DNA of 64,000 bases from Macrostomum lignano (lineage: Eukaryota), in contig NIVC01000124.1 in assembly GCA_002269645.1 (NCBI GenBank), positions 62,001-126,000 of the forward strand, given 5' to 3'. Shown in pieces: positions 470 to 60,147 of this stretch. Each line of letters starts with the position of its first letter. The stretch's first letter is position 1. Position numbers and translations under genes: made by a program. Below the pieces are notes generated by a model. It was not told the origin of the DNA. It worked only from the letters and a program-made list of their open reading frames with translations, and did not search any database.

Positions 470-1192
470 GTGGAGCGCGAACGGCTGGACCAGAACAAGG
501 CCTACATCCAGATCACCTATGTCGAGCCCTACCTGGAACCCTACGAGCTGCGCGAGCGTCAGTCGCAATTCGAGCGCAACAACGGCATAGCAACGTTTGT
601 CTACTCGACTCCGTACACTCAGAGCGGCCGGGCGCACGGCGATCTGCAAGATCAGTGCAAGCGCAAAACCGTGCTTACAACCAGTCACAGCTTCCCCTAC
701 ATCAAGACACGGCTACAGGTGATCCACACGAAATCCTTCAACTTGACTCCAATCGAAGTAGCAATTGAAGATTTGGAGAAGAAAAACGCTGAATTGACCC
801 GAGCTTTGGAGTTGAATCCGCCGGATTTGAAAATTCTACAAATGGTTTTGCAAGGCTCAATTGGTGCCACGGTTAATCAGGGCCCGGTCGAGATGGCCTC
901 GGTGTTCCTCGCCTCCGTGGCGGAGGGCACCCAGCCCGCCGCACCAGCGCATCACAAACTTCGTCTGGCCTTCAAGGAGTTCCTGTTGAAGTCGCACGAT
1001 GCCCTGGCTAAGAATCGCGACCTGATCATGTCGGATCAGGTGGATTATCAGACTGAGATGGAGAAGAATTATCAATTGATTAAAGACCAGCTGCTGCCGC
1101 TGACCAGCTGGGGCAATCCGAGCTTTGATCGTGAGCAGAGAAATGTTGTAGCCGCTAGGAGGAAGAGCAACTCTTCAATGTCCAGCTGCTGA
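470..1192 (+). CDS. Terminal coding exon of a DOCK-C family (DOCK6/7/8-like) Rho GEF, DHR-2 domain C-terminal part; gene is 5'-incomplete
   Basis: Acceptor ccgcAG at 468-469. Translation NKAYIQITYVEPY...GRAHG...KRKTVLTTSHSFPYIKTR...LTPIEVAIED...LQMVLQGSIGATVNQGP...HHKLRL matches my recall of the DOCK6/7/8 DHR-2 lobes. Stop TGA at 1190-1192. Confidence 0.93.
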   Translation: MERERLDQNKAYIQITYVEPYLEPYELRERQSQFERNNGIATFVYSTPYTQSGRAHGDLQDQCKRKTVLTTSHSFPYIKTRLQVIHTKSFNLTPIEVAIEDLEKKNAELTRALELNPPDLKILQMVLQGSIGATVNQGPVEMASVFLASVAEGTQPAAPAHHKLRLAFKEFLLKSHDALAKNRDLIMSDQVDYQTEMEKNYQLIKDQLLPLTSWGNPSFDREQRNVVAARRKSNSSMSSC

Positions 1193-1193
1193 C

Positions 1194-2227
1194 TTGGTGA
1201 CACTTGCGGCTGGATTGGTGACACTTGCAGCTGAATTGGTGACACTTGCGGCTGAATTGGTGACACTTGTAACTGAATTGGTGACACTTGCGGCTGGATT
1301 GGTGACACTTGCAGCTGAATTGGTGACACTTGCAGCTGAATTGGTGACACTTGTAGCTGAATTGGTGACACTTGCAGCTGAATTGGTGACACTTGTAGCT
1401 GAATTGGTGACACTTGCGGCTGAATTGGTGACACTTGTAACTGAATTGGTGACACTTGCGGCTGAATTGGTGACACTTGCAGCTGAATTGGTGACACTTG
1501 CAGCTGAATTGGTGACACTTGTAGCTGAATTGGTGACACTTGCAGCTGAATTGGTGACACTTGCAGCTGAATTGGTGACACTTGCGGCTGAATTGGTGAC
1601 ACTTGTAGCTGAATTGGTGACACTTGCAGCTGAATTGGTGACACTTGTAGCTGAATTGGTGACACTTGCAGCTGAATTGGTGACACTTGTAGCTGAATTG
1701 GTGACACTTGTAGCTGAATTGGTGACACTTGCAGCTGAATTGGTGACACTTGTAGCTGAATTGGTGACACTTGTAGCTGAATTGGTGACACTTGTAGCTG
1801 AATTGGTGACACTTGCAGCTGAATTGGTGACACTTGCAGCTGAATTGGTGACACTTGTAGCTGAATTGGTGACACTTGTAGCTGAATTGGTGACACTTGT
1901 AGCTGAATTGGTGACACTTGTAGCTGAATTGGTGACACTTGCGGCTGGATTGGTGACACTTGCAGCTGAATTGGTGACACTTGTAGCTGAATTGGTGACA
2001 CTTGTAGCTGAATTGGTGACACTTGTAGCTGAATTGGTGACACTTGTAGCTGAATTGGTGACACTTGTAGCTGAATTGGTGACACTTGCAGCTGAATTGT
2101 TGACACTTGTAGCTGAATTGGTGACACTTGCAGCTGAATTGGTGACACTTGTAGCTGAATTGGTGACACTTGTAGCTGAATTGGTGACACTTGTAGCTGA
2201 ATTGGTGACACTTGTAGCTGAATTGGT
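1194..2227. repeat. 21-bp minisatellite (ttggtgacacttgyagctgaa) starting immediately after the DOCK stop codon
   Basis: About 49 near-identical tandem units. It generates the spurious ORFs 1072-2211, 1155-2282 and 1194-2288. Confidence 0.97.
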
Positions 2228-2727
2228 GAAAATGTTTCAATTTTCTATCAGTGCTAAGCTGCTTAAAATTCGCAAATATCACCTTTAATATTTCAGTTTG
2301 AATTGACGACTTTATTCCAATAACTGCGTTTCTTATTCAGCTTAGTTTATTCCAAGGATGTCTGTCAATTTTGCTATATTTTCAGCGTTCACACACTATC
2401 CGCTTTTGCAATAGAAATCAGCATATTTTAATAAATAGTTTTTTTTAAATAGATCGTAAATAATTTTAGTTGAATCGCAAATTTCTCTTTAGACGCGTTA
2501 CAGACTACTGCTGCGAAACTATGAGGCTTTTTGCTATCTTTTTCCGGAAATTTTTTCTAAAGTTTCTGACTTTCTGCGAAATGCACTTTTATGCTCAAAA
2601 CTCAACTGTTTCCTTTCTTTCTGTTCTATCGATGCTGTTCACAGCTTTCTATTATTCGAGTCACTGCTGTGTTGTGAATATGCAGATATTTTCTCATAAA
2701 CTGGGTCTTCTGCCAACTGCTGACAGC

Positions 2728-4170
2728 CTTCCCTGAAGCCCCACTGCTCTTCCTGAGGCCTCACCGCCTTCCCTGAAGCCCCACTGCTTTCCCTAAAGCC
2801 TCACCGCCTTCACTGAAGCCCCACCGCCTCTTCACTGCTTTCCCTGAAGCCACACTGCCTTTCCTGAAGCTCGACTGCTTTTCCTGAAGCCTCACTGCCT
2901 TCCCTGAAACCCCATCGCCTTTCCTGAAGCCTTCCCTGAAGCTTCACTGCTTTCCCTGAAGCCTCACTACCTTCCCTGAAGCCTCACTACCTTCCCTGAA
3001 GCCTCACTGCCTTCCCTGAAGCCACACCGCCTTCCTTGAAGCCAAACTGCCTTCTCTGAAGCCACACTGCCTTCCCTAAAGCCTCACCGCCTTCACTGAA
3101 GCCCCACCGCCTCTTCACTGCTTTTCCTGAAGCCTCACTGCCTTCCCTGAAACCCCATCGCCTTTCCTGAAGCCTCACTGCCTTCCCTGAAACCCCATCG
3201 CCTTTTCTGAAGCCTCACTGCCTTCCCTGAAGCTTCACTGCTTTCCCTGAAGCCTCACTACCTTCCCTGAAGCCTCACTACCTTCCTTGAAGCCACACTG
3301 CCTTCCCTGAAACCTCACCGCCTCCCTTGAAGCCACACTGCCTTCCCTGAAACCTCACCGCCTCCCTTGAAGCCACACTGCCTTCCCTGAAACCTCACCG
3401 CCTTCCTTGAAGCCACACTGCCTTCCCTGAAACCTCACCGCCTCCCTTGAAGCCACACTGCCTTCCCTGAAACCTCACCGCCTCCCTTGAAGCCACACTG
3501 CCTTCCCTGAAACCTCACCGCCTCCCTTGAAGCCACACTGCCTTCCCTGAAACCTCACCGCCTTCCTTGAAGCCACACTGCCTTCCCTGAAACCTCACCG
3601 CCTCCCTTGAAGCCACACTGCCTTCTCTGAAACCTCACCGCCTTCCTTGAAGCCACACTGCCTTCCCTGAAACCTCACCGCCTCCCTTGAAGCCACACTG
3701 CCTTCCCTGAAACCTCACCGCCTTCCTTGAAGCCACACTGCCTTCCCTGAAACCTCACCGCCTCCCTTGAAGCCACACTGCCTTCCCTGAAACCTCACCG
3801 CCTTCCTTGAAGCCACACTGCCTTCCCTGAAACCTCACTGCCTCCCTTGAAGCCTCACTGCCTTCCCTGAAACCTCACCGCCTCCCTTGAAGCCACACTG
3901 CCTTCCCTGAAACCTCACCGCCTCCCTTGAAGCCTCACTGCCTTCCCTGAAACCTCACCGCCTCCCTTGAAGCCTCACTGCCTTCCCTGAAACCTCACCG
4001 CCTCCCTTGAAGCCACACTGCCTTCCCTGAAACCTCACCGCCTCCCTTGAAGCCACACTGCCTTCCCTGAAACCTCACCGCCTCCCTTGAAGCCACACTG
4101 CCTTCCCTGAAACCTCACCGCCTCCCTTGAAGCCTCACTGCCTTCCCTGAAGCCTCACCGCCTTCTCTAA
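2728..4170. repeat. ~20-bp minisatellite (ctgccttccctgaagcctca) with a 40-bp dimeric higher-order unit in its 3' half
   Basis: Exact 40-bp unit ccttccctgaaacctcaccgcctcccttgaagccacactg repeated from about 3300 to 4140. Confidence 0.95.
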
Positions 4171-7643: not shown

Positions 7644-9123
7644 CAGGCGCGTCGCCACCAGGGGGACCGGCTGGGGGAAGGACATGCCCCCCCCCCCAGT
7701 AAAAGCTATGCAGGGGGGACATGCCAATGCTTTGTCCCCCTCCCTCGACCCACCAATTGTGACACGTTGTATAGTAATCAATAATTTTTCTTCAGGGCGC
7801 CAAAATAAAGCGCCTGCGGCGTCAAAATGAGTGACGTGTCTGCTGCGCTAAAATGAGTGTCTGCTGCGCTAAAATGAATGCCTGCGGCGCTAAAATGAGT
7901 GCCTGCGGCTCCAAAATGAGTGCCTGTGGCGCCAAAATGAGTGGCTGTGGCGCCAAAATGAGTGCCTGTGGCTCCAAACTGAGTGCCTGTGGCTCCAAAA
8001 TGTGTGCCTGTGGCTCCAAAATGAGTGCCTGTGGCTCCAAAATGAGTGCCTGTGGCTCCAAAATGAGTGTCTGTGGCTCCAAAATGAGTGTCTGCGGCGC
8101 TAAAATGAGTGCCTGTGGCTCCAAAATGAGTGCCTGTGGCTCCAAAATGAGTGCCTGCGGCGCTAAAATGAGTGCCTGTGGCTCCAAAATGAGTGCCTGC
8201 GGCGCTAAAATGAGTGCCTGTGGCTCCAAAATGAGTGTCTGCGGCGCTAAAATGAGTGCCTGCGGCGCCAAAATGAGTGCCTGTGGCGCCAAAATGAGTG
8301 CCTGCGGCGCCAAAATGAGTGTCTGCGGCGCTAAAATGAGTGCCTGCGGCTCCAAAATGAGTGTCTGCGGCGCCAAAATGAGTGCCTGCGGCGCTAAAAT
8401 GAGTGCCTGCGGCGCTAAAATGAGTGCCTGCGGCTCCAAAATGAGTGTCTGCGGCGCCAAAATGAGTGCCTGTGGCGCCAAAATGAGTGCCTGCGGCTCC
8501 AAAATGAGTGTCTGCGGCTCCAAAATGAGTGCCTGTGGCTCCAAAATGTGTGCCTGTGGCTCCAAAATGAGTGCCTGTGGCTCCAAAATGAGTGTCTGTG
8601 GCTCCAAAATGAGTGTCTGCGGCGCTAAAATGAGTGCCTGTGGCTCCAAAATGAGTGCCTGCGGCGCTAAAATGAGTGCCTGTGGCTCCAAAATGAGTGT
8701 CTGCGGCGCTAAAATGAGTGCCTGCGGCGCCAAAATGAGTGCCTGTGGCGCCAAAATGAGTGCCTGCGGCGCCAAAATGAGTGTCTGCGGCGCTAAAATG
8801 AGTACCTGCGGCGCCAAAATGAGTGCCTGCGGCGCTAAAATGAGTGCCTGCGGCGCTAAAATGAGTGGCTGCGGCGCCAAAATGAGTGCCTGCGGCGCTA
8901 AAATGAGTGGCTGCGGCGCCAAAATGAGTGGCTGCGGCGCCAAAATGAGTGCCTGCGGCGCCAAAATGAGTGCCTGCGGCGCCAAAATGAGTGCCTGCGG
9001 CGCCAAAAATCGCTGACAACACGATTCTCAAACTAATCGAAATGTAGGAATTTTTAATCATGTACATACGTTTTGAATTCTTAGTTTTGTCCCCCCACCA
9101 TAAAACCCATGGCGACGCCCCTG
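7644..9123. mobile_element. hAT-like MITE carrying an internal 21-bp GGCGCC minisatellite (copy 1)
   Basis: Ends caggcgcgtcgcca (7644) and tggcgacgcccctg (9123) are imperfect TIRs. Flanks gtttgggg / gttgtggg match 6/8 as a TSD. The gcctgcggcgccaaaatgagt array fills about 7810-9008. Confidence 0.75.
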
Positions 9124-14329: not shown

Positions 14330-15127
14330 ATGCCTCTAGCCAGAGATCTGTTGCACCCATCTCTCAGTCAGGAGAAGCGAAAGCACAAGAAAAAGCGTCT
14401 GGTTCAGTCACCAAATTCCTGTTTTATGGATGTGAAGTGTGCAGGTAAAAATATTCAAATTGTTTAGTGTAATATAGCTATAATTTCAGTGTGTCTAAAT
14501 TTGAAACGCCATTGATAATTAACCAGATCTTCTGGCTGGCTAAGACTGTCTAATATCGCCTCAGACAGATGTTCAGACTGTCTAAAAATCACCTCGGACA
14601 GATCTTCAGGCTGGCTAAAAATCACCTCAGACAGATCTTCAGGCTGGCTAAAAATCACCTCGGACAGATCTTCACTGTCTAAAAATCACCTCCGACAGAT
14701 CTTCAGGCTGGCTAAAAATCACCTCAGACAGATCCTCACTGTCTAAAAATCACCTCCGACAGATCTTCAGGCTGGCTAAAAATCACCTCAGACAGATCTT
14801 CAGGCTGGCTAAAAATCACCTCAGACAGATCTTCAGACTGTCTAAAAATCACCTCAGACAGATCTTCAGGCTGGCTAAAAATCACCTCAGACAGATCCTC
14901 AGACTGGCTAAAAATCACCTCAGACAGATCTTTAGACTAAAATTTAACAATGCAAAATGTTCCCTAATCTGATCCTATAACCCTCAGGCTGCCTGAAGAT
15001 CACCACCGTGTTCTCGCACGCACAGACTGTTGTGGTGTGTGCCGGATGCAGCACCATCCTCAGCCAGCCTACTGGTGGCAAAGCTCGCCTCACCGAGGGC
15101 TGCTCGTTTCGTAATAAAAGCTACTGA
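14330..15127 (+). CDS. RPS27: 40S ribosomal protein S27 (eS27); exons 14330-14444 and 14988-15127; 84 aa
   Basis: Spliced translation [88 protein letters not shown] intron. All four Zn-finger cysteines are retained. Missed by the ORF track. Confidence 0.97.
14555..14937. repeat. 33-bp minisatellite inside the RPS27 intron
   Basis: ctaaaaatcacctcagacagatcttcaggctgg tandem copies. Confidence 0.92.
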
Positions 15128-15147
15128 ATTGCTGAATTTAACCTTGC

Positions 15148-18100
15148 CACTCTTCCCCTGAAGTAGGATATTGGTCCATGAAATATACCAAGAAAGCGGT
15201 TTGTTTCCCATAGATCTGTGTCCTTATAGTAGCCTAAAACAATGTTCACTGAAATCCTATTGCATTGTCTGTACACCGTACAGGTATATTAATTAGTCCA
15301 GTACTAGCTGGCTGTTATAGTTAGTATTTACTTCACACTAGGGCCTCTGAATTGAATATTTATAGTAAAATTCAGACATGGATATGCAGTTAAATACTTC
15401 AATAGATTCAATCCATTCGCACCTGCATATATCAACATTTGCACCTGTGTAATAACTACCTTTATATGCACCTTGACACCTGTAATTTTTTTACCGTAAG
15501 TGCGAAACTGCCGTAACTGCGAAAAAATCCATATAATAGATGGGCAAGGGGTAAAAACTATATATTCTACAGCTGTCACTTCAAAAAGCTAAAAGCACAA
15601 CAGACTTTGTTTGTCAATCAAGATTTTCAAGCCTTGTCAGTGGTAGGCTTATGAGAAGGAAAATTTTAAATCGATCTCTTCCATAGACATTTGATTTTGT
15701 TTCACAAGTTTTTGTTGGTATGTACACTGGTGTTGAGGGTTTGGCCATAGACAAAAGTCTTGAGGAGATGAGCTGACTGTCAGTGTGAAATTTATGCCTT
15801 TATATTTTTTGGCTTTCATTGCTTCTCAAAATGCCTAACAGTAGGCGAACACACGAAGAAAGTCGAAACAGTGTGTGCATTTTATGCTTTCGCAAGGGTG
15901 ACCGACAATTGACTGTAAGTCTGGAAGCCTTAATCGAGTGCTATGTCCTGCCTGGATTTGCTCAACACCGAGCATTTCTGCCGTCAGGTATCTGCAACTC
16001 CTGCCGGATCAAGTTGTCATCGCAGAACAGTGCAGCACCAGCACCTCTTCCGCCTCGCTTGCCATACGAAAAAGTAATAGATGATCTGCGCTACCTTCCA
16101 CCACTCACTCGTGAACGTCCTGAGTGTAGCTGCTGGATCTGCAATGTCGCCTCCAGCAGGGCTAACAAGAACGTGAATGTAGCGCACCCCTACATGTCAG
16201 ATGAGTTCAATTCAGGGGTAGCAACTCCACTTGGCCGTCCTCTGAACTGTGCACCTGGATCCGTGAAAGACAGCGTCAAACATTGCGGCACATGCTCGTC
16301 ACCAGTGGCGCGGGGAGTGCGACATGAATGTGGACAAGCCGCAAAGCTGCGCTACCTCAGCACCTTGAGTCCAAGTTCAATGGAGCATGTAGCCTGCAGT
16401 TTTCTCCGCAAAAAACTAAACGCAGCAGACGTGTCTTCTTCCGGAGATGCTGCAACAGCTAGTCTGTCTTCTGGTTTCGGTGGGCATCCAATCCAAGTCC
16501 AAGCTGTTGACACATCAACCAGCCATGTCCCACAAATGTTGCACAGCACAATGAGGGCCATGAAAACTGCCTTGAACCTAAGCACCAACCAGACCATTCA
16601 AGCTGCGCAAGTGATAAGAGAGGCGTCTGGCAACAGAAAAGCAATTCAACCTGGATTGAAGGAGTTCCTGTTTTCTGAAGGCCAGAGTGTCGCTCATTTC
16701 TTTGCTGTGGAGCAGCTCCAGTTCATCTGCAAGCAACCATCTGGGCAAGTAATTTCAATTGATCGTTCAGCTGTGTTCTGTTGCAATGTGAGTGAGTTCT
16801 TGGCTTATGTTTGCAGTTTGAGAGGCATGGCTGAGATGGAACATCGTCTCAAGCTTGGAATTGATGGTGGAGGGAATTCATTGAAGATTTGCATCAGCGT
16901 TACTGATAGTGATGGGCTCCTGGCACAAGCTTCAATGCCTGGGCCATCCAATAGATTTCTCAACTCGGGGGTTAAAAAGCTTTTCGTCCTGGCCATCGTA
17001 GAGGATGTCAAAGAGTGTTACGAGAATGTCAAAACTCTATTATCCACCATGGACATCAGTTCCTTCCTATTCACTTTGGCCTGTGACTTCAAGCTAGCCA
17101 ACATCATCTGTGGCATTCAAAGCCATGCTTCGACGCATCCTTGCCTTTACTGCGAGGGCAAGTCTCCATGGACCACTCCAGCACCAAGCAGAACACTTGG
17201 CTCAGTGAGGCGGCTGGCAAACGAGTTTCAGTTGGCCGGCGGACATCAGCCTGCTGCCAAACACTTTGCCAACTGTGTTCAGTCTCCACTGCTGCCTGGA
17301 CTGGATTCCACTGAACTGATTGAGTTGGTGCCACCACCTGAGCTGCACATTATGCTTGGCATTGTGAACCGTTTGCTGGATGAGCTCAACAACCGATGGG
17401 GCAATGATATGGCCTACAAGTGGGCCCATGGAGCAGGGATCTGTCGTCAGCAGTATCATGGAGGTTGCTTGGAAGGTCCAGCATGCAAGAAGCTGCTTCT
17501 AAAGGCTGGCGAGCTATGGAACATTTTACCTGCGCACCTGAAAATGTTTGCCGTTGCACTTCAGGATTTCAATGCAATTCGGCTAGCCTGCTTTGGCCAA
17601 ACTCTTGCCAATGACTTTGCTTTGCATATTGCTCGATTTCAGACGACATGCCAGTTCCTCCAGCTAAATGTGACACCCAAGATGCATGCACTATTCCACC
17701 ATGTGCCAACATTCTGTTCAAAGTCTGGCAAGGCATTGGGGAGCTTTAGTGAGCAGACAGTGGAGTCAGCTCACAGTGATTTCGAGGCCACCTGGCAAAG
17801 ATATCGGCGCCCTTTCAATCATCCACAGTACGCCGCAAACCTTCTTCAGGCTGTTGTGAACTATAATTCGTTTCATATTTGAACTTCTAACGTTATGGTT
17901 TGATCAACTGGACATAAACTGACTGACCTTGCCTGATTTATTTGTTTCTTCAATAGTGAGTTGCTAGTCTGTTTTAGTTGTATTGTATGGTTCTTTGTAT
18001 TGTATTGTCTTTTGTATGGTTCTATTTCTGGTTTCTATTTCTAAACAATGTTCTATTCAGCAACATCTTTCGTATACATTCAGAATACAAGCAACTTTTT

Positions 18101-18504
18101 AGACTTACTTATTATATCACTTTCAATCACTGTGAATTTTTTCGCAGTACTTACGGTAGAAAAAAATTGAAGGTGTCAAGGTGCATATAAAGGTAGTTAT
18201 TACACAGGTGCAAATGTTGATGTATGCAGGTGCGAATGGATTGAATCTATTGAAGTGTTTAACTGCATATCCATGTCTGAATTTTACTATAAATGTTCAA
18301 TTCAGAGGCCCTAGTGTGAAGTGAATACTAACTATAACAGCCAGCTAGTACTGGACTAATTGATATGCCTGTACGGTGTACAGACAGTGCGATAGGATTT
18401 CAGTGAACATTGTTTTGGGCTACTATAAGGACACAGATCCATGGGAAACAAACCGCTTTCTTGGTGTATTTCATGGACCGGTATCCTACTTCAGGGGAAG
18501 AGTG
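15148..18504 (+). mobile_element. Complete autonomous DNA transposon, Chapaev-like (CMC / Transib-RAG1-related), 3,357 bp
   Basis: Ends 5'-CACTCTTCCCCTGAAGTAGG...CCTACTTCAGGGGAAGAGTG-3'. 4-bp TSD TTGC at 15144-15147 and 18505-18508. TIRs of ~370 bp (about 15148-15530 and 18135-18504), 96% identical over the first 333 bp. One intact internal ORF. Confidence 0.9.
15831..17882 (+). CDS. Chapaev/RAG1-core-like DDE transposase, 683 aa from first ATG
   Basis: N-terminal H-x7-C-x2-C...C-x2-C...CxCxxC zinc-binding region (Chapa-like). Putative catalytic D (KLGIDGGG), D (LACDFK) and E (SEQTVESAH). CxxC (HPCLYC) plus H-x4-H (KMHALFHH) resemble the RAG1/Transib ZnB site. No stops or frameshifts. Confidence 0.88.
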   Translation: MPNSRRTHEESRNSVCILCFRKGDRQLTVSLEALIECYVLPGFAQHRAFLPSGICNSCRIKLSSQNSAAPAPLPPRLPYEKVIDDLRYLPPLTRERPECSCWICNVASSRANKNVNVAHPYMSDEFNSGVATPLGRPLNCAPGSVKDSVKHCGTCSSPVARGVRHECGQAAKLRYLSTLSPSSMEHVACSFLRKKLNAADVSSSGDAATASLSSGFGGHPIQVQAVDTSTSHVPQMLHSTMRAMKTALNLSTNQTIQAAQVIREASGNRKAIQPGLKEFLFSEGQSVAHFFAVEQLQFICKQPSGQVISIDRSAVFCCNVSEFLAYVCSLRGMAEMEHRLKLGIDGGGNSLKICISVTDSDGLLAQASMPGPSNRFLNSGVKKLFVLAIVEDVKECYENVKTLLSTMDISSFLFTLACDFKLANIICGIQSHASTHPCLYCEGKSPWTTPAPSRTLGSVRRLANEFQLAGGHQPAAKHFANCVQSPLLPGLDSTELIELVPPPELHIMLGIVNRLLDELNNRWGNDMAYKWAHGAGICRQQYHGGCLEGPACKKLLLKAGELWNILPAHLKMFAVALQDFNAIRLACFGQTLANDFALHIARFQTTCQFLQLNVTPKMHALFHHVPTFCSKSGKALGSFSEQTVESAHSDFEATWQRYRRPFNHPQYAANLLQAVVNYNSFHI

Positions 18505-18541
18505 TTGCCTGAGTCCTGTAGCTGGTCTGTTTTTGTGATTA

Positions 18542-18548
18542 AATAAAA
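18542..18548 (+). promoter_or_regulatory. AATAAA poly(A) signal, probably the original RPS27 signal displaced by the transposon
   Basis: AATAAA about 35 bp after the right TSD. Removing the element puts it about 60 bp downstream of the RPS27 stop. Confidence 0.55.
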
Positions 18549-18717
18549 TATTTAAACAATTTGTGGAAAGAAAAGGCAAATAATGAGCTCGTGATAATTC
18601 TTTTGATGATCTTTTTTATTTTTCTTTATAATATCTTTATAATTTCTTTATAATATATTATCTTGTACTGGTTCATAAAATTTCCTATGTACGCGTAGTG
18701 TAATCGTTACAAGTGAA

Positions 18718-20096
18718 GTGATTTCCGGATCTTGTACAAACTGCTGAGATTACTGGATCTTGTACAAACTGCTGAGATTTCTGGATCTTGTACAAACTGC
18801 TGAGATTTCCGGATATTGTACAAACTGCTGAGATTTCCGGATATTGTACAAACTGCTGAGATTACTGGATCTTGTACAAACTGCTGAGATTACTGGATCT
18901 TGTACAAACTGCTGAGATTTCCGGATATTGTACAAACTGCTGAGATTTCCGGATATTGTACAAACTGCTGAGATTACTGGATCTTGTACAAACTGCTGAG
19001 ATTACTGGATCTTGTACAAACTGCTGAGATTTCTGGATCTTGTACAAACTGCTGAGATTTCCGGATATTGTACAAACTGCTGAGATTTCTGGATCTTGTA
19101 CAAACTGCTGAGATTTCCGGATATTGTACAAACTGCTGAGATTACTGGATCTTGTACAAACTGCTGAGATTACTGGATCTTGTACAAACTGCTGAGATTA
19201 CTGGATCTTGTACAAACTGCTGAGATTACTGGATCTTGTACAAACTGCTGAGATTACTGGATCTTGTACAAACTGCTGAGATTACTGGATCTTGTACAAA
19301 CTGCTGAGATTACTGGATCTTGTACAAACTGCTGAGATTACTGGATCTTGTACAAACTGCTGAGATTACTGGATCTTGTACAAACTGCTGAGATTACTGG
19401 ATCTTGTACAAACTGCTGAGAATACTGGATCTTGTACAAACTGCTGAGATTACTGGATCTTGTACAAACTGCTGAGATTACTGGATCTTGTACAAACTGC
19501 TGAGATTACTGGATCTTGTACAAACTGCTGAGATTTCTGGATCTTGTACAAACTGCTGAGATTACTGGATCTTGTACAAACTGCTGAGATTTCTGGATCT
19601 TGTGCAAACTGCTGAGATTTCTGGATCTTGTACAAACTGCTGAGATTTCTGGATCTTGTACAAACTGCTGAGATTTCTGGATCTTGTACAAACTTCTGAG
19701 ATTACTGGATCTTGTACAAACTGCTGAGATTTCTGGATCTTGTGCAAACTGCTGAGATTTCTGGATCTTGTACAAACTGCTGAGATTTCTGGATCTTGTA
19801 CAAACTGCTGAGATTTCTGGATCTTGTACAAACTGCTGAGATTTCTGGATCTTGTACAAACTGCTGAGATTTCTGGATCTTGTGCAAACTGCTGAGATTT
19901 CTGGATCTTGTACAAACTGCTGAGATTACTGGATCTTGTACAAACTGCTGAGATTACTGGATCTTGTACAAACTTCTGAGATTTCTGGATCTTGTACAAA
20001 CTTCTGAGATTACTGGATCTTGCACAAACTGCTGAGATTACTGGATCTTGCACAAACTTCTGAGATTACTGGATCTTGTACAAACTGCTGAGATTT
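18718..20096. repeat. 28-bp minisatellite (ggatcttgtacaaactgctgagattact)
   Basis: About 49 tandem units at 28-bp spacing. Confidence 0.97.
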
Positions 20097-21352: not shown

Positions 21353-32220
<10,868 letters not shown>

Positions 32221-50160: not shown

Positions 50161-52305
50161 TCACCCACTAGATAACGACGCCCCCGCCGCAGCGCAACAG
50201 ACCGCTGTGTGCACCTTCTGCGTCCTCGACTGGCAGAAGCCTTTGCCGCAGACGGGACAAACGTACGGTTTGTTCTTGCTGTGCACGTAGCTGTGATCGC
50301 GCAGATGGTCGCGACGACGGAACGCTTTGCCGCACACGTCGCAAGGAAATGGCCGTTCGTCTGTGTGAGTGCGCTCGTGGATGAGCTGGTTGTAGGACTT
50401 CGTGAACCGGCGGCTGCAGTGACGGCACACGTATTCTTTGCGGCTTCTGGGAATGGGAATTGACGCATTTATCAGGTTTGATCATTGGTTTTGGGTTTGG
50501 TGTTAGTAGCAATTGTTAACTGCCAAGTTTAAAGATGCAAACCAACCACTAGGCTACGATTCCACAGAAGTCAGCACAAAACCCTACATTAGTGCCCATC
50601 AGAAATCAGTGAATGACTTCTAAATCTTCAGAACTCATTGGATGATCTCCGATACATCAGAAGTCAATGGATGATCTCCGTTTCTTTAGAGGCCATTGGA
50701 TGATCTCCGGTTCTTCAGAACTCATTGGATGACCTCCGGCTCCTCAGAAGTCATTGGATGACCACCGATTCTTCAGAAGTCAACGAATGACCTCCGGCTC
50801 CTCAGAAGTCATTGGATGATCTCCGTTTCTTTAGAGGCCATTGGATGATCTCCGGTTCTTCAGAACTCATTGGATGACCTCCGGCTCCTCAGAAGTCATT
50901 GGATGACCACCGATTCTTCAGAAGTCAACGAATGACCTCCGGCTCCTCAGAAGTCATTGGATGATCTCCAATTCTTTAGAAGTCATTGGATGACCTCCGA
51001 TTCTTCAGAACTCATTGGATGACCTCCGGCTCCTCAGAAGTCATTGGATGACCACCGATTCTTCAGAAGTCAACGAATGACCTCCGGCTCCTCAGAAGTC
51101 ATTGGATGATCTCCGTTTCTTTAGAGGCCATTGGATGATCTCCGGTTCTTCAGAACTCATTGGATGACCTCCGGCTCCTCAGAAGTCATTGGATGACCAC
51201 CGATTCTTCAGAAGTCAACGAATGACCTCCGGCTCCTCAGAAGTCATTGGATGATCTCCAATTCTTTAGAAGTCATTGGATGACCTCCGATTCTTCAGAA
51301 CTCATTGGATGACCTCCGGCTCCTCAGAAGTCATTGGATGACCACCGATTCTTCAGAAGTCAACGAATGACCTCCGGCTCCTCAGAAGTCATTGGATGAT
51401 CTCCGTTTCTTTAGAGGCCATTGGATGATCTCCGGTTCTTCAGAACTCATTGGATGACCTCCGGCTCCTCAGAAGTCATTGGATGACCACCGATTCTTCA
51501 GAAGTCAACGAATGACCTCCGGCTCCTCAGAAGTCATTGGATGATCTCCAATTCTTTAGAAGTCATTGGATGATCTCCGGTTCTTCAGAACTCATTGGAT
51601 GACCTCCGGCTCCTCAGAAGTCATTGGATGACCACCGATTCTTCAGAAGTCAACGAATGACCTCCGGCTCCTCAGAAGTCATTGGATGATCTCCAATTCT
51701 TCAGAAGTCATTGGATGACCACCGATTCTTCAGAACTCATTGGATGACCCCAGATTCTTCAGAACTCATTGGATGACCCCAGATTCTTCAGAACTCATTG
51801 GATGATCTCTGGTTCTTCGGAAGTCATTGGATGACCTCCAGTTCTTCGGAAGTCATTGGATGACCTCAGATTCTTCAAAAGTCATTGGATGACCTCCAAA
51901 TCTTCCAGGGTGGTTTGCTTCTATTTAGGTCCTCAGCATATTCACGGTTCCCCTCTTACTTGATCTTCCAAACCCTTCCCACTTGATCCCAGATTTCCCA
52001 GACTCAATTTACCTTCCGCGAGGTTTTTTAACCAAACCGGTGTCCAACAACGGTTGTTGCGGCCGCGGCAGCTGAGCTGATGACGATGTTGAAGACGATG
52101 AGCTAGACGTATCGACGCTTTTTACAGACTCGCTGCAAGACTGAGCCAGCCGACTAAAATCAAATCGTTTTGAAGGCTGTTGATGCCACTGATGCTGCCG
52201 CAATTCTGGCTGCATCAACTGATGAAGCTGGGGCATCTGCGCATTGGAACTCATCAGAGGTAAATACTGCTGCCAAAATCTCAGGTAGGTTGACAACAGC
52301 TGCAT
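50161..52305 (-). CDS. Odd-skipped family C2H2 zinc-finger transcription factor (Osr/odd-like); exons 52305(ATG; or acceptor at 52358)-52013 and 50446-50161
   Basis: [74 protein letters not shown] is the odd-skipped finger array. KRFDFSRLA resembles the Osr 'RFDFANLA' motif. The phase-2 GT-AG intron joins PRGR|SRKEY. Confidence 0.9.
50620..51905. repeat. 29-bp minisatellite with 145/290-bp higher-order repeats in the odd-skipped intron
   Basis: The variant 'gaggccattgg' recurs at about 50691, 50836, 51126 and 51416 (spacings 145, 290, 290). Confidence 0.93.
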
Positions 52306-52797
52306 GTCAGTCGACGAGATCAGTGGCGGTGGAGTCGGGAGCGCTTTTGGATGTTTATCTGCAGAAATTTTATTATAGAATTTTTTTAACTTCAGCAAGT
52401 TTAATTTTACTACATCCTTCTCTTGTATCCTTCAGCTACGGCTACCGCCCCCAGCTCTCGCGCTATCTGTCTGACTAATACTCGAAAAATGTTTCTGTTT
52501 TTAATCTTGAAGCAATAAAACAACTGGACAGTATAGTGAGCACAGGAGTGTAATACGGACGAAAATTGTATACAGCGGAATTTTTGCGTCATGAGTCATT
52601 GTGGGGGACCACTGGTGTTCATTTCTAATACGTCGTAATAAGGACAGCATTTAGCTAATTCGTTTTGACAACTCAGTATCAAATATTTGAACTGTTTACA
52701 GGTGCCCAGCGCTTGCTTGTAAAAATTGATGAGAAGATTGTTTATTAAATTAATGTTTTTTACAGTGGCATATGAAGGATAGTAAAGGGCAAGGACG

Positions 52798-54250
52798 GAG
52801 TGAGTTTATGAGTGAGTTTATGTGTGAGTTCATGAATGAGTTCATGGATAAGTCCATGAGCAAGTTCATAAATGAGTCCATGAGCAAGTTCATGAATGAG
52901 TCCATGAGCAAGTTCATAAATGAGTCCATGAGCAAGTTCATGAATGAGTCCATGAGCAAGTTCATGAATGAGTCCATGTGCAGGTTCATGAATGAGTCCA
53001 TGAGCAGGTTCATGAATGAGTCCATGTGCAGGTTCATGAATCAGTCCATGAGCAGGTTCATGAATGAGTCCATGAGCAAGTTCATAAATGAGTCCATGAG
53101 CAAGTTCATGAATGAGTCCATGAGCAGGTTCATGAATGAGTCCATGAGCAAGTTCATAAATGAGTCCATGAGCAAGTTCATGAATGAGTCCATGAGCAAG
53201 TTCATGAATGAGTCCATGAGCAAGTTCATGAATGAGTCCATGAGCAGGTTCATGAATAAGTCCATGAGCAAGTTCATGAATGAGTCCATGAGCAGGTTCA
53301 TGAATGAGTCCATGAGCAGGTTCATGAATGAGTCCATGAGCAAGTTCATGAATGAGTCCATGAGCAAGTTCATGAATGAGTCCATGAGCAGGTTCATGAA
53401 TGAGTCCATGAGCGAGTTCATGAATGAGTCCATGAGCAGGTTCATGAATGAGTCCATGAGCAAGTTCATGAATGAGTGAGTTAGTTCACGAGTGACTTTA
53501 TGAGTGAGTTTATGTGTGAGTTTATGTGTGAGTTCATGAATGAGTTCATTGATAAGTCCATGAGCAAGTTCATGAATGAGTCCATGAGAAAGTTCATGAA
53601 TGAGTGAGTTAGTTCACGAGTGACTTTATGAGTGAGTTTATGAGTGAGTTCATGAATGAGTTTATGAGTGAGTTCATGAGTGAGTTTACAATTGAGTTCA
53701 TGAGTGAGTTCATGAGTGTGTTCATGAGTGAGTTCATAAGTGAGTTCATGAGTGAGTTCATGAGTGATTTCATGAGTTAGTTCATGAGTGAGTTCATGAG
53801 TGAGTTCATGAGTGAGTTCATGAGTGAGTTCATGAGTGAGTTCATGAGTGAGTTCATGAGTGAGTTCATGAGTGAGTTCATGAGTGATTCCATGAGTGAG
53901 TTCATGAGTGAGTTCATGAGTGAGTTCATGAGTGTGTTCATGAGTGAGTTCATAAGTGAGTTCATGAGTGAGTTCATGAGTGAGTTCATGAGTGAGTTCA
54001 TGAGTGAGTTCATGAGTGAGTTCATGAGTGAGTTCATGAGTGAGTTCATGAGTGAGTTCATGAGTGAGTTCATGAGTAAGTTCATGAGTGAGTTCATGAT
54101 TGAGTTCATGAGTGAGTTCATGAGTGAGTTCATGAGTGAGTTCATGAGTGAGTTCATGAGTGAGTTCATGAGTGAGTTCATGAGTGAGTTCATGAGTGAG
54201 TTCATGAGTGAGTTCATGAGTGAGTTCATGAGTGAGTTCATGAGTGAGTC
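52798..54250. repeat. 12/24-bp TCATGA minisatellite (catgaatgagtccatgagcaagtt, then catgagtgagtt)
   Basis: Direct observation. Confidence 0.96.
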
Positions 54251-57420: not shown

Positions 57421-58284
57421 TAGAGAATAGTATTCATCAAAATAAGCCAAGGTCCATGGGGTCATAATCCTACTATATCCTACTATATACATAAATAATA
57501 ACAGTAAAATGCTGTTGTTATTTTAAAAATTACATCGGGCCACTTTTGCGGGCCTGGCTGAATAATAAGGTCATAAATCTTGAACGATACTAGTATAGGT
57601 ACTGCCTGAGTACAGCTCTACCCTGCGCACTACGTTAACACAGACAGGAGTGTTCGCCCAGAGCTATACATACTGTCAGGTTTTTGTCTTTCCGTCCCTC
57701 TTGTCGAGTTTTTGAGTTCAGCACTATACTATAAGCTGCTAGTGCAGTCCCCCCCCTAACCCTTGTAACTAGCCAATGGTTAGGCTGCACACTAAGCAAG
57801 ATTGTTAGCCATGTGAGATCGAAATTATTTGTACATTTTCAGCCTAACCCACCCCCGCCCCCTCGGCCGGCAGTGAAAAACTACAGCGACTAGGCGAATA
57901 GCTGCGGGCTAAATAGCAATATCCAGCACAGAAGCGAAGGCTACAGAGAGAAGAAAAGGAAAGAGAGGCTTCCAAATTGGTTCATAATCACAGCCACCGC
58001 TTTGAAGAGAAAACAGCATAGGCCATACTACTAATCTCATTTCGACAAGCAGCTAGTCCTGCTTATTGAACGATTCTAAATAATATTAGTTTCATTGGCA
58101 ATCCATCTAATTAATCAATCTGTTATACCAGCTAATTTTTTTTGTTATTCTGGCTGACTGTTGCAGTGGAATTTAGGCTAAGCACATTGTGCACTTCGGA
58201 ATTCGTTAAGCGGGCAAAGCTTACAACAGGTAAGTGTTGTTTCCAGTTGATTTGCGGAAGTGCTCAGTCACTTGCGTTAACATT

Positions 58285-59762
58285 CATCAACTCACTCATG
58301 AACTCACTCATGAACTCACTCATAAACTCAGTTATGAATTCACACATGAACTCACTCATGAATTCACTCATGAACTCACTCATGAACTCACTCATAAACT
58401 CAGTTATGAATTCACACATGAACTCACTCATGAACTCACTCATGAACTCACTCATGAACTCACTCTAAACTCACTCATGAACTCACTTTAAACTCACTTA
58501 CGAGCATGAACTCACTCATGGACTCACTCATGAACTCAGTTATGAATTCACACATGAACTCACTCATGAATTCACTCATGAACTCAATCATGAACTCACT
58601 CATGAACTCACTCATGAACTTACTCATGAACTCACTCATGAACTCACTCATGAACTCACTCATGAACTCACTCATAAACTCAGTCATGAACTCACTCATG
58701 AACTCACTCACGAACTCACTCATGAACTCACTCATGAACTCACTCATAAACTCAGTTATGAACTCACACATGAACTCACTCATGAACTCACTCATGAACT
58801 CAATCATGAACTCACTCATGAGCTCACTCATGAAGTCACTCATGAACTCACTCATGAACTCACTCATGAACTCAGTCATGAACTCACTCGTGAACTCACT
58901 CATGAACTCACTCATGAACTCACTCATGAACTCACTCATGAACTCACTTTAAACTCACTCATGAACTCACTTTAAACTCACTTACGAGCATGAACTCACT
59001 CATGGACTCACTCATGAACTCAGTTATGAATTCACACATGAACTCACTCATGAATTCACTCATGAACTCAATCATGAACTCACTCATGAACTCACTCATG
59101 AACTTACTCATGAACTCACTCATGAACTCACTCATGAACTCACTTTAAACTCACTCATGAACTCACTTTAAACTCACTTACGAGCATGAACTCACTCATG
59201 GACTCACTCATGAACTCAGTTATGAATTCACACATGAACTCACTCATGAATTCACTCATGAACTCAATCATGAACTCACTCATGAACTCACTCATGAACT
59301 TACTCATGAACTCACTCATGAACTCACTCATGAACTTACTCATGAACTCACTCATGAACTCACTCATGAACTCACTCATAAACTCAGTCATGAACTCACT
59401 CATGAACTCACTCACGAACTCACTCATGAACTCACTCATGAACTCACTCATGAACTCACTCATGAACTCACTCGTGAACTCACTCATGAACTCACTCATG
59501 AACTCACTCATGAACTCACTCGTGAACTCACTCATGAACTCACTCATGAACTCACTCATGAACTCACTCGTGAACTCACTCATGAACTCACTCACGAACT
59601 CACTCATGAACTCACTCATGAACTCACTCATGAACTCACTCATGAACTCACTCGTGAACTCACTCATGAACTCACTCATGAACTCACTCATGAACTCACC
59701 CATGAACTCACTCATAAACTCAGTTATGAATTCACTCATAAACTCACTCATGAACTCACCCA
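58285..59762. repeat. 12-bp minisatellite (catgaactcact), reverse complement of the 53700-54250 unit
   Basis: Direct observation, with internal block duplications (e.g. 'ttacgagcatg' three times). Confidence 0.96.
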
Positions 59763-60147
59763 TCAACAGTGCTCATATTGTATTGCCCTTACAAGATTAG
59801 TTGATTTAATTGAAAAAATTGCCACCAAAGGGTCGCAAGAACTGTACTCTCACCAACCGGCATAGCTGCAGTGTGCGCATCAACCACTGGCTGAGCGGCG
59901 CTCCACCACACAGCATCCTCATCCTCTTTATTTGCTGATGAGGCGCGTACAGATGAGAAACAGACAGAAATAAACAGAGATCCCTGAGACGTACTTCACT
60001 CCCTATATATATACATAATCCCTCAACTCAGCCAGGCACATTACGGACAATAGCCGTGCAACTGAATTAAGATAATGAAGATACTCACCTGCCTCCTTCA
60101 TCACCATTGAACTAATAATTATAATTATACAGAGCGAAGCCGAACTC

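What the first reader, a model, noticed from the sequence alone, without database searches (positions are those of the whole stretch)
15148..18504. Fully polarised, CpA-biased C/T differences between the two TIRs of the transposon (RIP-like or ADAR-like signature)
Seen: aligning left TIR 15148-15480 by hand with the reverse complement of the right TIR gives 13 substitutions in 333 bp, all transitions. In all 13 the left arm holds the A/T state. Twelve are T vs C (15171, 15172, 15186, 15235, 15261, 15265, 15285, 15290, 15329, 15357, 15395, 15430) and one is A vs G (15212). Nine of 13 are in CpA context and two in CpG. Established: fungal RIP produces CpA>TpA changes in repeats, and ADAR produces A>G with a 5'-U preference in dsRNA. 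Inference: three readings are possible. (a) A repeat- or ssDNA-directed, strand-biased cytosine deamination hit the left arm, which would be unusual in an animal. (b) UA>UG changes accumulated in the right arm. (c) Selection favoured a foldback RNA, since 12 of 13 mismatches become U.G wobble pairs in a + strand read-through transcript.
Basis: partly seen in the sequence, partly recalled or inferred. Interest (0 to 1): 0.8.

Follow-up and report, generated by a model that had tools for sequence, protein, structure and literature searches.

The report
ADAR-like A-to-G cluster in transposon arm
One terminal repeat of a flatworm DNA transposon carries 12 same-strand A-to-G changes that look like ADAR RNA editing rather than fungal-type RIP, and they probably entered this reference genome because the assembly was polished with RNA-seq reads.

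Summary
The two 345-nt inverted repeats (15148-15492 and 18160-18504) differ at exactly the 13 listed transitions, plus two more at the inner end.

The RIP reading has the polarity backwards. Six other copies of the element in the same Macrostomum lignano assembly, and a related outgroup family, show the T/A state is ancestral. The right arm of this copy gained 12 A>G changes on the + strand (18169-18481). Only 15212 and 15261 are derived in the left arm.

- The cluster stays within the duplex-forming repeat.
- It hits 12 of 119 A and 0 of 102 T.
- It favours 5'-U (9 of 12) and never has a 5'-G.
- It runs opposite to the background spectrum of these copies, which is G:C>A:T and rich in CpG sites.

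This is the ADAR hyper-editing signature. The copy lies in sense orientation in the 3'UTR of an RPS27 gene. The assembly (Mlig_3_7) was polished with Pilon using RNA-seq reads.

The most likely explanation (about 0.55) is real RNA editing of the repeat foldback, written into the consensus as an artefact. A true germline A>G hypermutation (about 0.25-0.3) would be remarkable. Mapping genomic DNA reads would settle it.

The parts
14988..15127 (+). Last exon of a ribosomal protein S27 (eS27) paralogue, with stop codon TGA at 15125-15127. The transposon starts 20 nt after the stop.
   Evidence: Translation. It is 100% identical to M. lignano P0027. Locus L009 is the window's own locus.
15144..15147 (.). 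Left copy of the 4-bp target-site duplication TTGC.
   Evidence: The empty paralogous sites L007 and L008 carry a single ATGC.
15148..15492 (+). Left terminal inverted repeat (345 nt, terminus CACTCTTCC). It holds the ancestral T/A state at the 12 cluster sites. Its own derived changes are 15212 G>A, 15261 C>T at a CpG, and 15482 T>G.
15831..17882 (+). Intact 683-aa transposase ORF with a RAG1/Transib-like fold. It is 99% identical to M. lignano hypothetical proteins.
18160..18504 (+). Right terminal inverted repeat (345 nt), the derived arm.
18169..18481 (+). Cluster of 12 A>G changes on the + strand, at 18169, 18222, 18257, 18295, 18323, 18362, 18367, 18387, 18417, 18466, 18480 and 18481. 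The 5' neighbours are U x9, A x2, C x1, G x0.
18505..18508 (.). Right copy of the target-site duplication TTGC.
18538..18547 (+). ATTAAA and AATAAA poly(A) signals of the RPS27 3'UTR, conserved in the empty paralogues. They place the whole transposon inside the 3'UTR, with the right repeat close to the likely RNA 3' end.
   Evidence: Actual use of these signals is inferred.

Best explanation
The differences are 12 A>G changes on the sense (+) strand of the right terminal repeat. They carry the signature of ADAR hyper-editing of the ~343-bp double-stranded RNA formed when the two repeats of a read-through transcript fold back.

This copy sits in sense orientation inside the 3'UTR of a ribosomal-protein gene, so its RNA is likely abundant. 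The Mlig_3_7 assembly was polished with Pilon using RNA-seq reads together with genomic reads. The strongly edited adenosines were therefore most likely written into the consensus as G.

On this reading the feature reports real RNA editing but is not a DNA mutation.

Shown: the polarity, the strand, confinement to the repeat, the neighbour preference, the genomic context and the polishing procedure. Inferred: that this RNA is edited, that RNA reads outvoted DNA reads here, and that 3'-biased coverage explains why only the right arm was changed.
For: - Polarity. Six other copies at different loci carry the A/T state in both arms at all 12 sites. The outgroup family has T at 15171, 15172, 15186, 15265, 15285 and 15290.
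- Signature. 12 of 119 A and 0 of 102 T are changed. 9 of 39 UA against 3 of 80 other A are changed (Fisher p=0.002). No changed site has a 5'-G. This matches the pan-metazoan ADAR preference (PMC9989829) and the T enrichment seen in planarians (PMC8797187).
- Confinement. No window-G/others-A difference lies between 16846 and 18169. The cluster lies 10 nt and 23 nt inside the ends of the repeat.
- Background. Substitutions among copies are mostly G:C>A:T, many at CpG sites.
- Context. The copy lies 20 nt after the RPS27 stop codon, in sense orientation and upstream of the poly(A) signals. The paralogous sites are empty.
- Provenance. The window is NIVC01000124.1 of Mlig_3_7. [quoted passage not shown]
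- Recurrence. L014 has 7 A>G changes within 23 bp of a repeat of the sister family.
Against: - No reads or independent assembly could be examined, so a DNA/RNA difference is not demonstrated.
- A foldback should be edited on both arms, yet the left arm has no A>G change (12 vs 0). The 3'-coverage explanation for this is ad hoc.
- More than half of the weighted read evidence would have to be edited at 12 sites at once.
- An ADAR gene in M. lignano was not verified here.
- The L014 cluster lies on the strand antisense to its host gene.
Confidence: 0.55

Rival explanations
1. The 12 A>G changes are really in germline DNA. ADAR-type deamination reached the DNA of this copy in one of two ways. An edited transcript was reverse-transcribed or used as a repair template and converted the 3'-most repeat (cDNA or RNA-templated gene conversion). 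Alternatively, ADAR acted on the DNA strand of an RNA:DNA hybrid.
For: The signature evidence is the same as for the best explanation. Change in one arm only, close to the 3' end of the transcription unit, fits a short 3' conversion tract. The cluster sits in the one copy embedded in a probably highly transcribed gene. Small clusters in other copies could be the same process.
Against: It needs a rare or undemonstrated RNA-to-DNA step in a cut-and-paste element. No second copy carrying the same mutated arm was found among 7 copies. The documented RNA-seq polishing gives a simpler route to the same sequence.
Confidence: 0.25
2. Error-prone DNA synthesis (Pol eta or Pol iota type, WA>WG) during repair or gap filling of the repeat produced the cluster.
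For: 11 of 12 sites lie in a WA motif and all are on one strand.
Against: All 12 are transitions. By established knowledge, Pol eta tracts also give A>T and A>C changes. Synthesis primed from the adjacent right flank would place A>G on the - strand, not the + strand (inference). Nothing in this model explains the exact coincidence with the repeat.
Confidence: 0.05
3. RIP-like or APOBEC-like cytosine deamination (CpA>TpA) hit the left arm.
For: Seen without an outgroup, 9 of 13 differences look like CpA/TpA.
Against: The T state is present in 13 of 14 arms of the family and in the outgroup. Only 15261 (a CpG) and 15212 are derived in the left arm. RIP indices are unremarkable. The host is an animal.
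Confidence: 0.02
4. The right arm was acquired by recombination or gene conversion from a diverged subfamily, or the asymmetry is ancestral.
For: Concerted change of both arms at 15217/18435 shows that the arms can be homogenised. The three T>C sites in the L003 left arm coincide with outgroup-family states.
Against: Ordinary divergence would include G:C>A:T changes, transversions and indels, whereas here 12 of 12 are A>G. The other six copies lack the asymmetry. This model only moves the hypermutation event to another copy.
Confidence: 0.05
5. Selection favoured G.U wobble pairs in a foldback RNA.
For: 12 mismatches are G.U in the + strand RNA.
Against: The fold energy is unchanged (-624.2 vs -625.4 kcal/mol). 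Six sister copies, three of them with intact ORFs, lack the changes. Any A>G at an A-U pair gives a G.U pair.
Confidence: 0.02

Closest known systems
ADAR A-to-I hyper-editing of dsRNA formed by inverted repeats of transposable elements (metazoa-wide)
   Same: Only A>G changes, strand-coordinated, clustered, and restricted to a long perfect duplex. 5'-U/A is favoured and 5'-G is absent. The substrate is an inverted-repeat transposon inside a 3'UTR.
   Different: Here the G bases are in a genome assembly, not in RNA reads. Only one arm of the duplex is affected. The host ADAR and the editing itself were not observed directly.
Fungal repeat-induced point mutation (RIP)
   Same: Transition-only, strand-polarised differences between two copies of a repeat, involving CpA/TpA dinucleotides.
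   Different: The direction is the reverse: TpA>TpG on the + strand of the right arm (TpA>CpA when read in left-arm orientation), not CpA>TpA. Only one copy is changed. The host is a flatworm.
Genomic footprints of edited retrotransposons (APOBEC G>A, ADAR A>G fixed through reverse transcription; own knowledge)
   Same: An RNA or ssDNA deaminase signature visible between copies of a repeat family.
   Different: Those elements replicate through RNA. This is a cut-and-paste transposon with a target-site duplication and terminal repeats, so it has no obligatory RNA intermediate.
Consensus errors introduced by polishing a genome with RNA-seq reads
   Same: Mlig_3_7 was polished with Pilon using RNA-seq reads (PMC5730564). 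RNA-only variants can replace genomic bases where RNA coverage dominates.
   Different: This is not demonstrated for this locus. I found no published report of the effect in this assembly.
Transib superfamily transposons (Transib, TransibSU, Chapaev, Chapaev3) and the RAG1 core
   Same: The predicted fold matches the RAG1 core and HzTransib. There is a D-D-E arrangement with CxxC and HxxxxH zinc motifs at RAG1-like spacing, and the termini start with CAC.
   Different: The target-site duplication is 4 bp rather than the 5 bp of Transib and RAG. The terminal repeats are 322-345 nt long. There is no sequence-level Pfam or PDB match.

Membership tests
Fungal RIP | Mutations are C:G>T:A in the affected copy | tested here: not met
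   The derived changes are A>G on the + strand of the right arm. T/A is ancestral in 13 of 14 arms and in the outgroup.
Fungal RIP | CpA>TpA preference and raised RIP indices | tested here: not met
   TpA is the ancestral dinucleotide. TpA/ApT is 1.05 in the left arm and 0.94 in the right. (CpA+TpG)/(ApC+GpT) is 1.14 and 1.19.
Fungal RIP | Both copies of the repeat are mutated | tested here: not met
   12 changes of this type in the right arm and none in the left.
Fungal RIP | Fungal host with the RID-type machinery | tested here: not met
   The host is the flatworm Macrostomum lignano.
ADAR hyper-editing | Exclusively A>G, all on one strand, clustered | tested here: met
   12 of 12 are A>G on the + strand within 313 nt. 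0 of 102 T, 0 of 53 C and 0 of 71 G are changed.
ADAR hyper-editing | Confined to a long dsRNA-forming region | tested here: met
   All 12 lie inside the 345-nt repeat and none lies in the 1.3 kb upstream of it. A 343-bp foldback is predicted.
ADAR hyper-editing | 5' neighbour U/A favoured, G disfavoured | tested here: met
   U 9, A 2, C 1, G 0. UA sites 9 of 39 against other A 3 of 80, p=0.002. The preference is as described in PMC9989829.
ADAR hyper-editing | G in RNA but A in genomic DNA | not testable with these tools
   No reads and no second assembly of M. lignano are reachable. L009 is the window itself.
ADAR hyper-editing | Both strands of the duplex are edited | tested here: not met
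   No A>G change in the left arm. This could reflect coverage bias during polishing (inference).
ADAR hyper-editing | Host encodes an ADAR | not tested
   Planarian flatworms have two ADARs (PMC8797187). Nothing was found for Macrostomum.
Pol eta-type WA>WG mutagenesis | Targets A in WA motifs | tested here: met
   11 of 12 sites.
Pol eta-type WA>WG mutagenesis | Mixed spectrum at A:T pairs, including transversions | tested here: not met
   12 of 12 are transitions.
Transib superfamily (Chapaev-like) transposon | RAG1/Transib-like DDE transposase | tested here: met
   Foldseek matches: RAG1 E=3e-13 over about 560-650 columns, HzTransib E=2e-8. D345, D419, C438/C441, H619/H624 and E641/E645 are invariant.
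Transib superfamily (Chapaev-like) transposon | Sequence-profile membership | tested here: not met
   No Pfam family and no PDB sequence hit.
Transib superfamily (Chapaev-like) transposon | Target-site duplication length (5 bp in Transib and RAG; 4 bp in Chapaev, from own knowledge) and CAC termini | tested here: inconclusive
   The duplication is 4 bp in 13 of 13 copies and is confirmed by the empty sites. Termini are CACTCTTCC and CACGCCTCC. This fits Chapaev, not Transib proper.

The most novel reading that the evidence does not exclude
The 12 A>G changes are truly present in germline DNA. An ADAR-type, dsRNA-guided deamination pattern would then have been transferred into the DNA of a cut-and-paste transposon. 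The route would be cDNA or RNA-templated conversion of the 3' repeat, or ADAR acting on an RNA:DNA hybrid. This would give animals a repeat-directed hypermutation that is functionally analogous to fungal RIP but works on adenines.
Probability: 0.25. Interest if true: 0.85.

Novelty: new member of a known kind. Interest (0 to 1): 0.35.

Why it matters
If the leading explanation holds, the practical lesson is that the widely used Mlig_3_7 reference contains RNA-editing events written into its DNA consensus. Such sites would mimic mutations, hide true editing sites from RNA/DNA comparisons, and distort transposon age estimates. The same sites would also be a ready-made map of ADAR substrates in a flatworm where editing has not been described.

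If the changes are really in DNA, this would be a rare case of RNA-editing information becoming heritable in a DNA transposon, and an animal counterpart of repeat-induced mutation.

Separately, the element is a young, apparently active RAG1/Transib-like transposon with 4-bp target duplications in a transgenesis-capable model animal.

Tried and rejected
- Looked for the window's transposase in the assembly collection: not on record.
- The RPS27 route gave L009, which is the window itself and therefore not an independent confirmation. L007 and L008 are empty paralogous sites.
- No Logan, ENA or other M. lignano data exist in the protein collection. All close hits come from GCA_002269645.1, so no read-level or second-assembly check was possible.
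- Pfam and PDB sequence searches of the transposase gave nothing.
- The bacterial-type promoter and terminator scan is irrelevant for this host.
- A self-BLAST of the window found no other non-tandem inverted repeat to compare.
- A literature search for ADAR in Macrostomum found nothing useful.
- The small T>C cluster in the L003 left arm was first counted as a second editing cluster. Its three sites coincide with the outgroup family's states, so it may be a conversion and is left ambiguous.
- The small inverted repeat in L004 has 7 G/A mismatches but cannot be polarised.

Rejected readings:
- RIP or APOBEC: wrong polarity, and no C or G is changed in the derived arm.
- Spontaneous deamination of ssDNA: this would give mainly C>T.
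- Selection for G.U pairs: no energy change.
- General transcription-associated mutation: the changes do not extend outside the repeat.
Full report
**Observation.** The inverted repeats are 345 nt long (15148-15492 and 18160-18504, 96% complementary). It adds two at the inner end: 15482 G/T and 15483 T/C. The stated contexts are also right: 9 CpA or TpG, 2 CpG, 1 CpC and 1 CpT.

**What the element is.**
- The 683-aa ORF (15831-17882) matches only hypothetical proteins of the flatworm Macrostomum lignano (99% and 71% identity).
- The window is contig NIVC01000124.1 of assembly GCA_002269645.1 (Mlig_3_7). Locus L009 is identical to it, and window coordinate + 62000 gives the contig coordinate.
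- Six further copies of the element (L001-L006) lie at six other loci. Each has a different 4-bp target-site duplication and identical termini, CACTCTTCC...GGAAGAGTG.
- The window copy lies 20 nt after the stop codon of an RPS27 paralogue, in the same orientation. Two paralogous RPS27 loci (L007, L008) are empty sites with a single ATGC where the window has TTGC-element-TTGC. Their ATTAAA/AATAAA signals lie just beyond the insertion point. The element is therefore a genuine insertion inside a 3'UTR.
- The protein has no Pfam or PDB sequence match. Its AlphaFold model (pLDDT 75) matches the RAG1 core (E=3e-13) and HzTransib (E=2e-8).
- The invariant residues D345, D419, C438/C441, H619/H624 and E641/E645 parallel the RAG1 catalytic and zinc residues (own knowledge).
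- With 4-bp duplications and CAC termini, the element is best called a Chapaev-like member of the Transib superfamily (PMC4411706).

**Polarity.**
- At 12 sites only the window's right arm carries G on the + strand: 18169, 18222, 18257, 18295, 18323, 18362, 18367, 18387, 18417, 18466, 18480 and 18481. The window's left arm and both arms of all six other copies carry the A/T state.
- The six copies form one young clade, so a second family (71% protein identity; copies L010-L015, 322-nt repeats, 4-bp duplications) was used as an outgroup. Its repeats align over the first ~150 nt.
- The outgroup has T at 15171, 15172, 15186, 15265, 15285 and 15290, and C only at 15235. It has G at 15212 and C at 15261.
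15212 (G>A) and 15261 (C>T at a CpG) are ordinary changes in the left arm.
- The RIP reading is refuted. The UA>UG reading is supported.

**Signature.**
- In the right arm, 12 of 119 A and 0 of 102 T are changed, and no C or G is changed.
- 9 of 39 A preceded by T are hit, against 3 of 80 others (Fisher p=0.002). The 5' neighbours are U 9, A 2, C 1, G 0.
- No window-G/others-A difference lies between 16846 and 18169. The cluster starts 10 nt inside the inner boundary of the repeat and ends 23 nt from the outer one.
- The + strand RNA of the two arms folds into a 343-bp duplex. The changes convert 12 A-U pairs to G.U with no change in energy.
- Background substitutions among the 13 copies are mostly G:C>A:T, many of them at CpG sites, with about 16% A>G plus T>C and a fair share of transversions. 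The cluster therefore runs against the neutral spectrum.
- This combination is the known hallmark of ADAR hyper-editing: 5' U/A favoured and G disfavoured in all metazoans (PMC9989829), and T enrichment upstream of edited sites in planarians, which have two ADARs (PMC8797187).

**Recurrence.**
- In the sister family, copy L014 has 7 A>G changes within 23 bp of its left repeat, all on one strand.
- L003 has three T>C changes and one A>G within 52 bp of its left repeat. The three T>C sites coincide with the outgroup family's bases, so conversion cannot be excluded there.
- A small unrelated inverted repeat in L004 has 7 G/A mismatches, mostly TG against TA, but it cannot be polarised.

**How an RNA signature gets into a DNA sequence.** The Methods of the assembly paper state that the Canu assembly 'was polished with Pilon v. 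[quoted passage not shown] - In a multi-copy repeat, genomic short reads map ambiguously. RNA read pairs anchored in the unique, highly expressed RPS27 3'UTR map uniquely (inference).
- Strongly edited adenosines would then be called G.
- This explains the sense strand, the restriction to the duplex, the very clean UA preference (only the best sites exceed the calling threshold), and why the affected copy is the one embedded in a ribosomal-protein transcript.
- It does not by itself explain why the left arm is untouched. 3'-biased coverage near the poly(A) site is a possible reason, but this was not tested.

**Rivals.**
- *True germline change (about 0.25).* This needs an RNA-to-DNA step (cDNA or RNA-templated conversion of the 3' arm) or ADAR action on an RNA:DNA hybrid. 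It fits the one-arm pattern but has no direct support here.
- *Pol eta-type WA>WG synthesis.* It fits the motif. However, it predicts transversions at A:T pairs and, for synthesis primed from the adjacent flank, the opposite strand.
- *Conversion from a diverged subfamily.* This only relocates the event.
- *Selection for G.U pairs.* This is unnecessary.

**Verdict.** The likeliest account is real RNA editing imprinted into the reference by RNA-seq polishing. Mapping genomic reads at twelve named positions decides the matter.

Noticed in passing
window 15831-17882; L001-L006, L010-L015: The transposase has no Pfam or PDB sequence match, but its predicted fold matches the RAG1 core and HzTransib. 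Invariant D, D, CxxC, HxxxxH and E residues sit at RAG1-like spacing. There are two young families (7 and 6 copies sampled, several with intact ORFs), with 4-bp target duplications and 322-345-nt repeats starting with CAC. This is a Chapaev-like, apparently active Transib-superfamily transposon in M. lignano.
   Followed up: partly
window 15125-15147 and 18505-18547; L007:12539, L008:11995: The transposon is inserted 20 nt after the RPS27 stop codon, upstream of the poly(A) signals that the two empty paralogues retain. This paralogue's 3'UTR therefore carries a 3.36-kb insertion in sense orientation.
   Followed up: partly
all 13 copies (alignments); window 15148-18504: Background substitutions between copies are dominated by G:C>A:T, many at CpG sites. 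CpG observed/expected is 0.50 in the element and 0.65 in the window. This hints at germline cytosine methylation of these elements in a flatworm.
   Followed up: no
window 15217 and 18435: Mirror positions changed together. The window copy and the outgroup have T in both arms, while the six-copy clade has A in both arms. This suggests arm-to-arm homogenisation, or selection on a transposase-binding site.
   Followed up: no
L014:3338-3360 (alignment columns 228-250 of family 2): Seven A>G changes within 23 bp on the + strand of the left repeat of one copy. That copy lies inside a gene annotated on the opposite strand.
   Followed up: partly
L003:3367-3419 (window-equivalent 15183-15235): Three T>C changes and one A>G in the left repeat of one copy. 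The three T>C sites coincide with the bases of the outgroup family. 15235 mirrors the window's edited site 18417.
   Followed up: partly
L004:2526-2950: A small unrelated inverted repeat (about 154-nt arms, 88% identical) in which 7 of 15 mismatches are G against A, mostly TG against TA. Polarity is unknown.
   Followed up: no
window 15502-15515: A 14-bp insertion (GCGAAACTGCCGTA), apparently a local duplication, just inside the left repeat. It is present only in the window copy.
   Followed up: no
window 1000-2300, 2800-4000, 7700-9100, 18570-20000, 25900-27800, 50500-51900, 52700-54250, 58200-59800: The window is packed with long minisatellite arrays of 12-29-bp units. One lies in the RPS27 intron and one starts 70 nt downstream of the transposon.
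   Followed up: no
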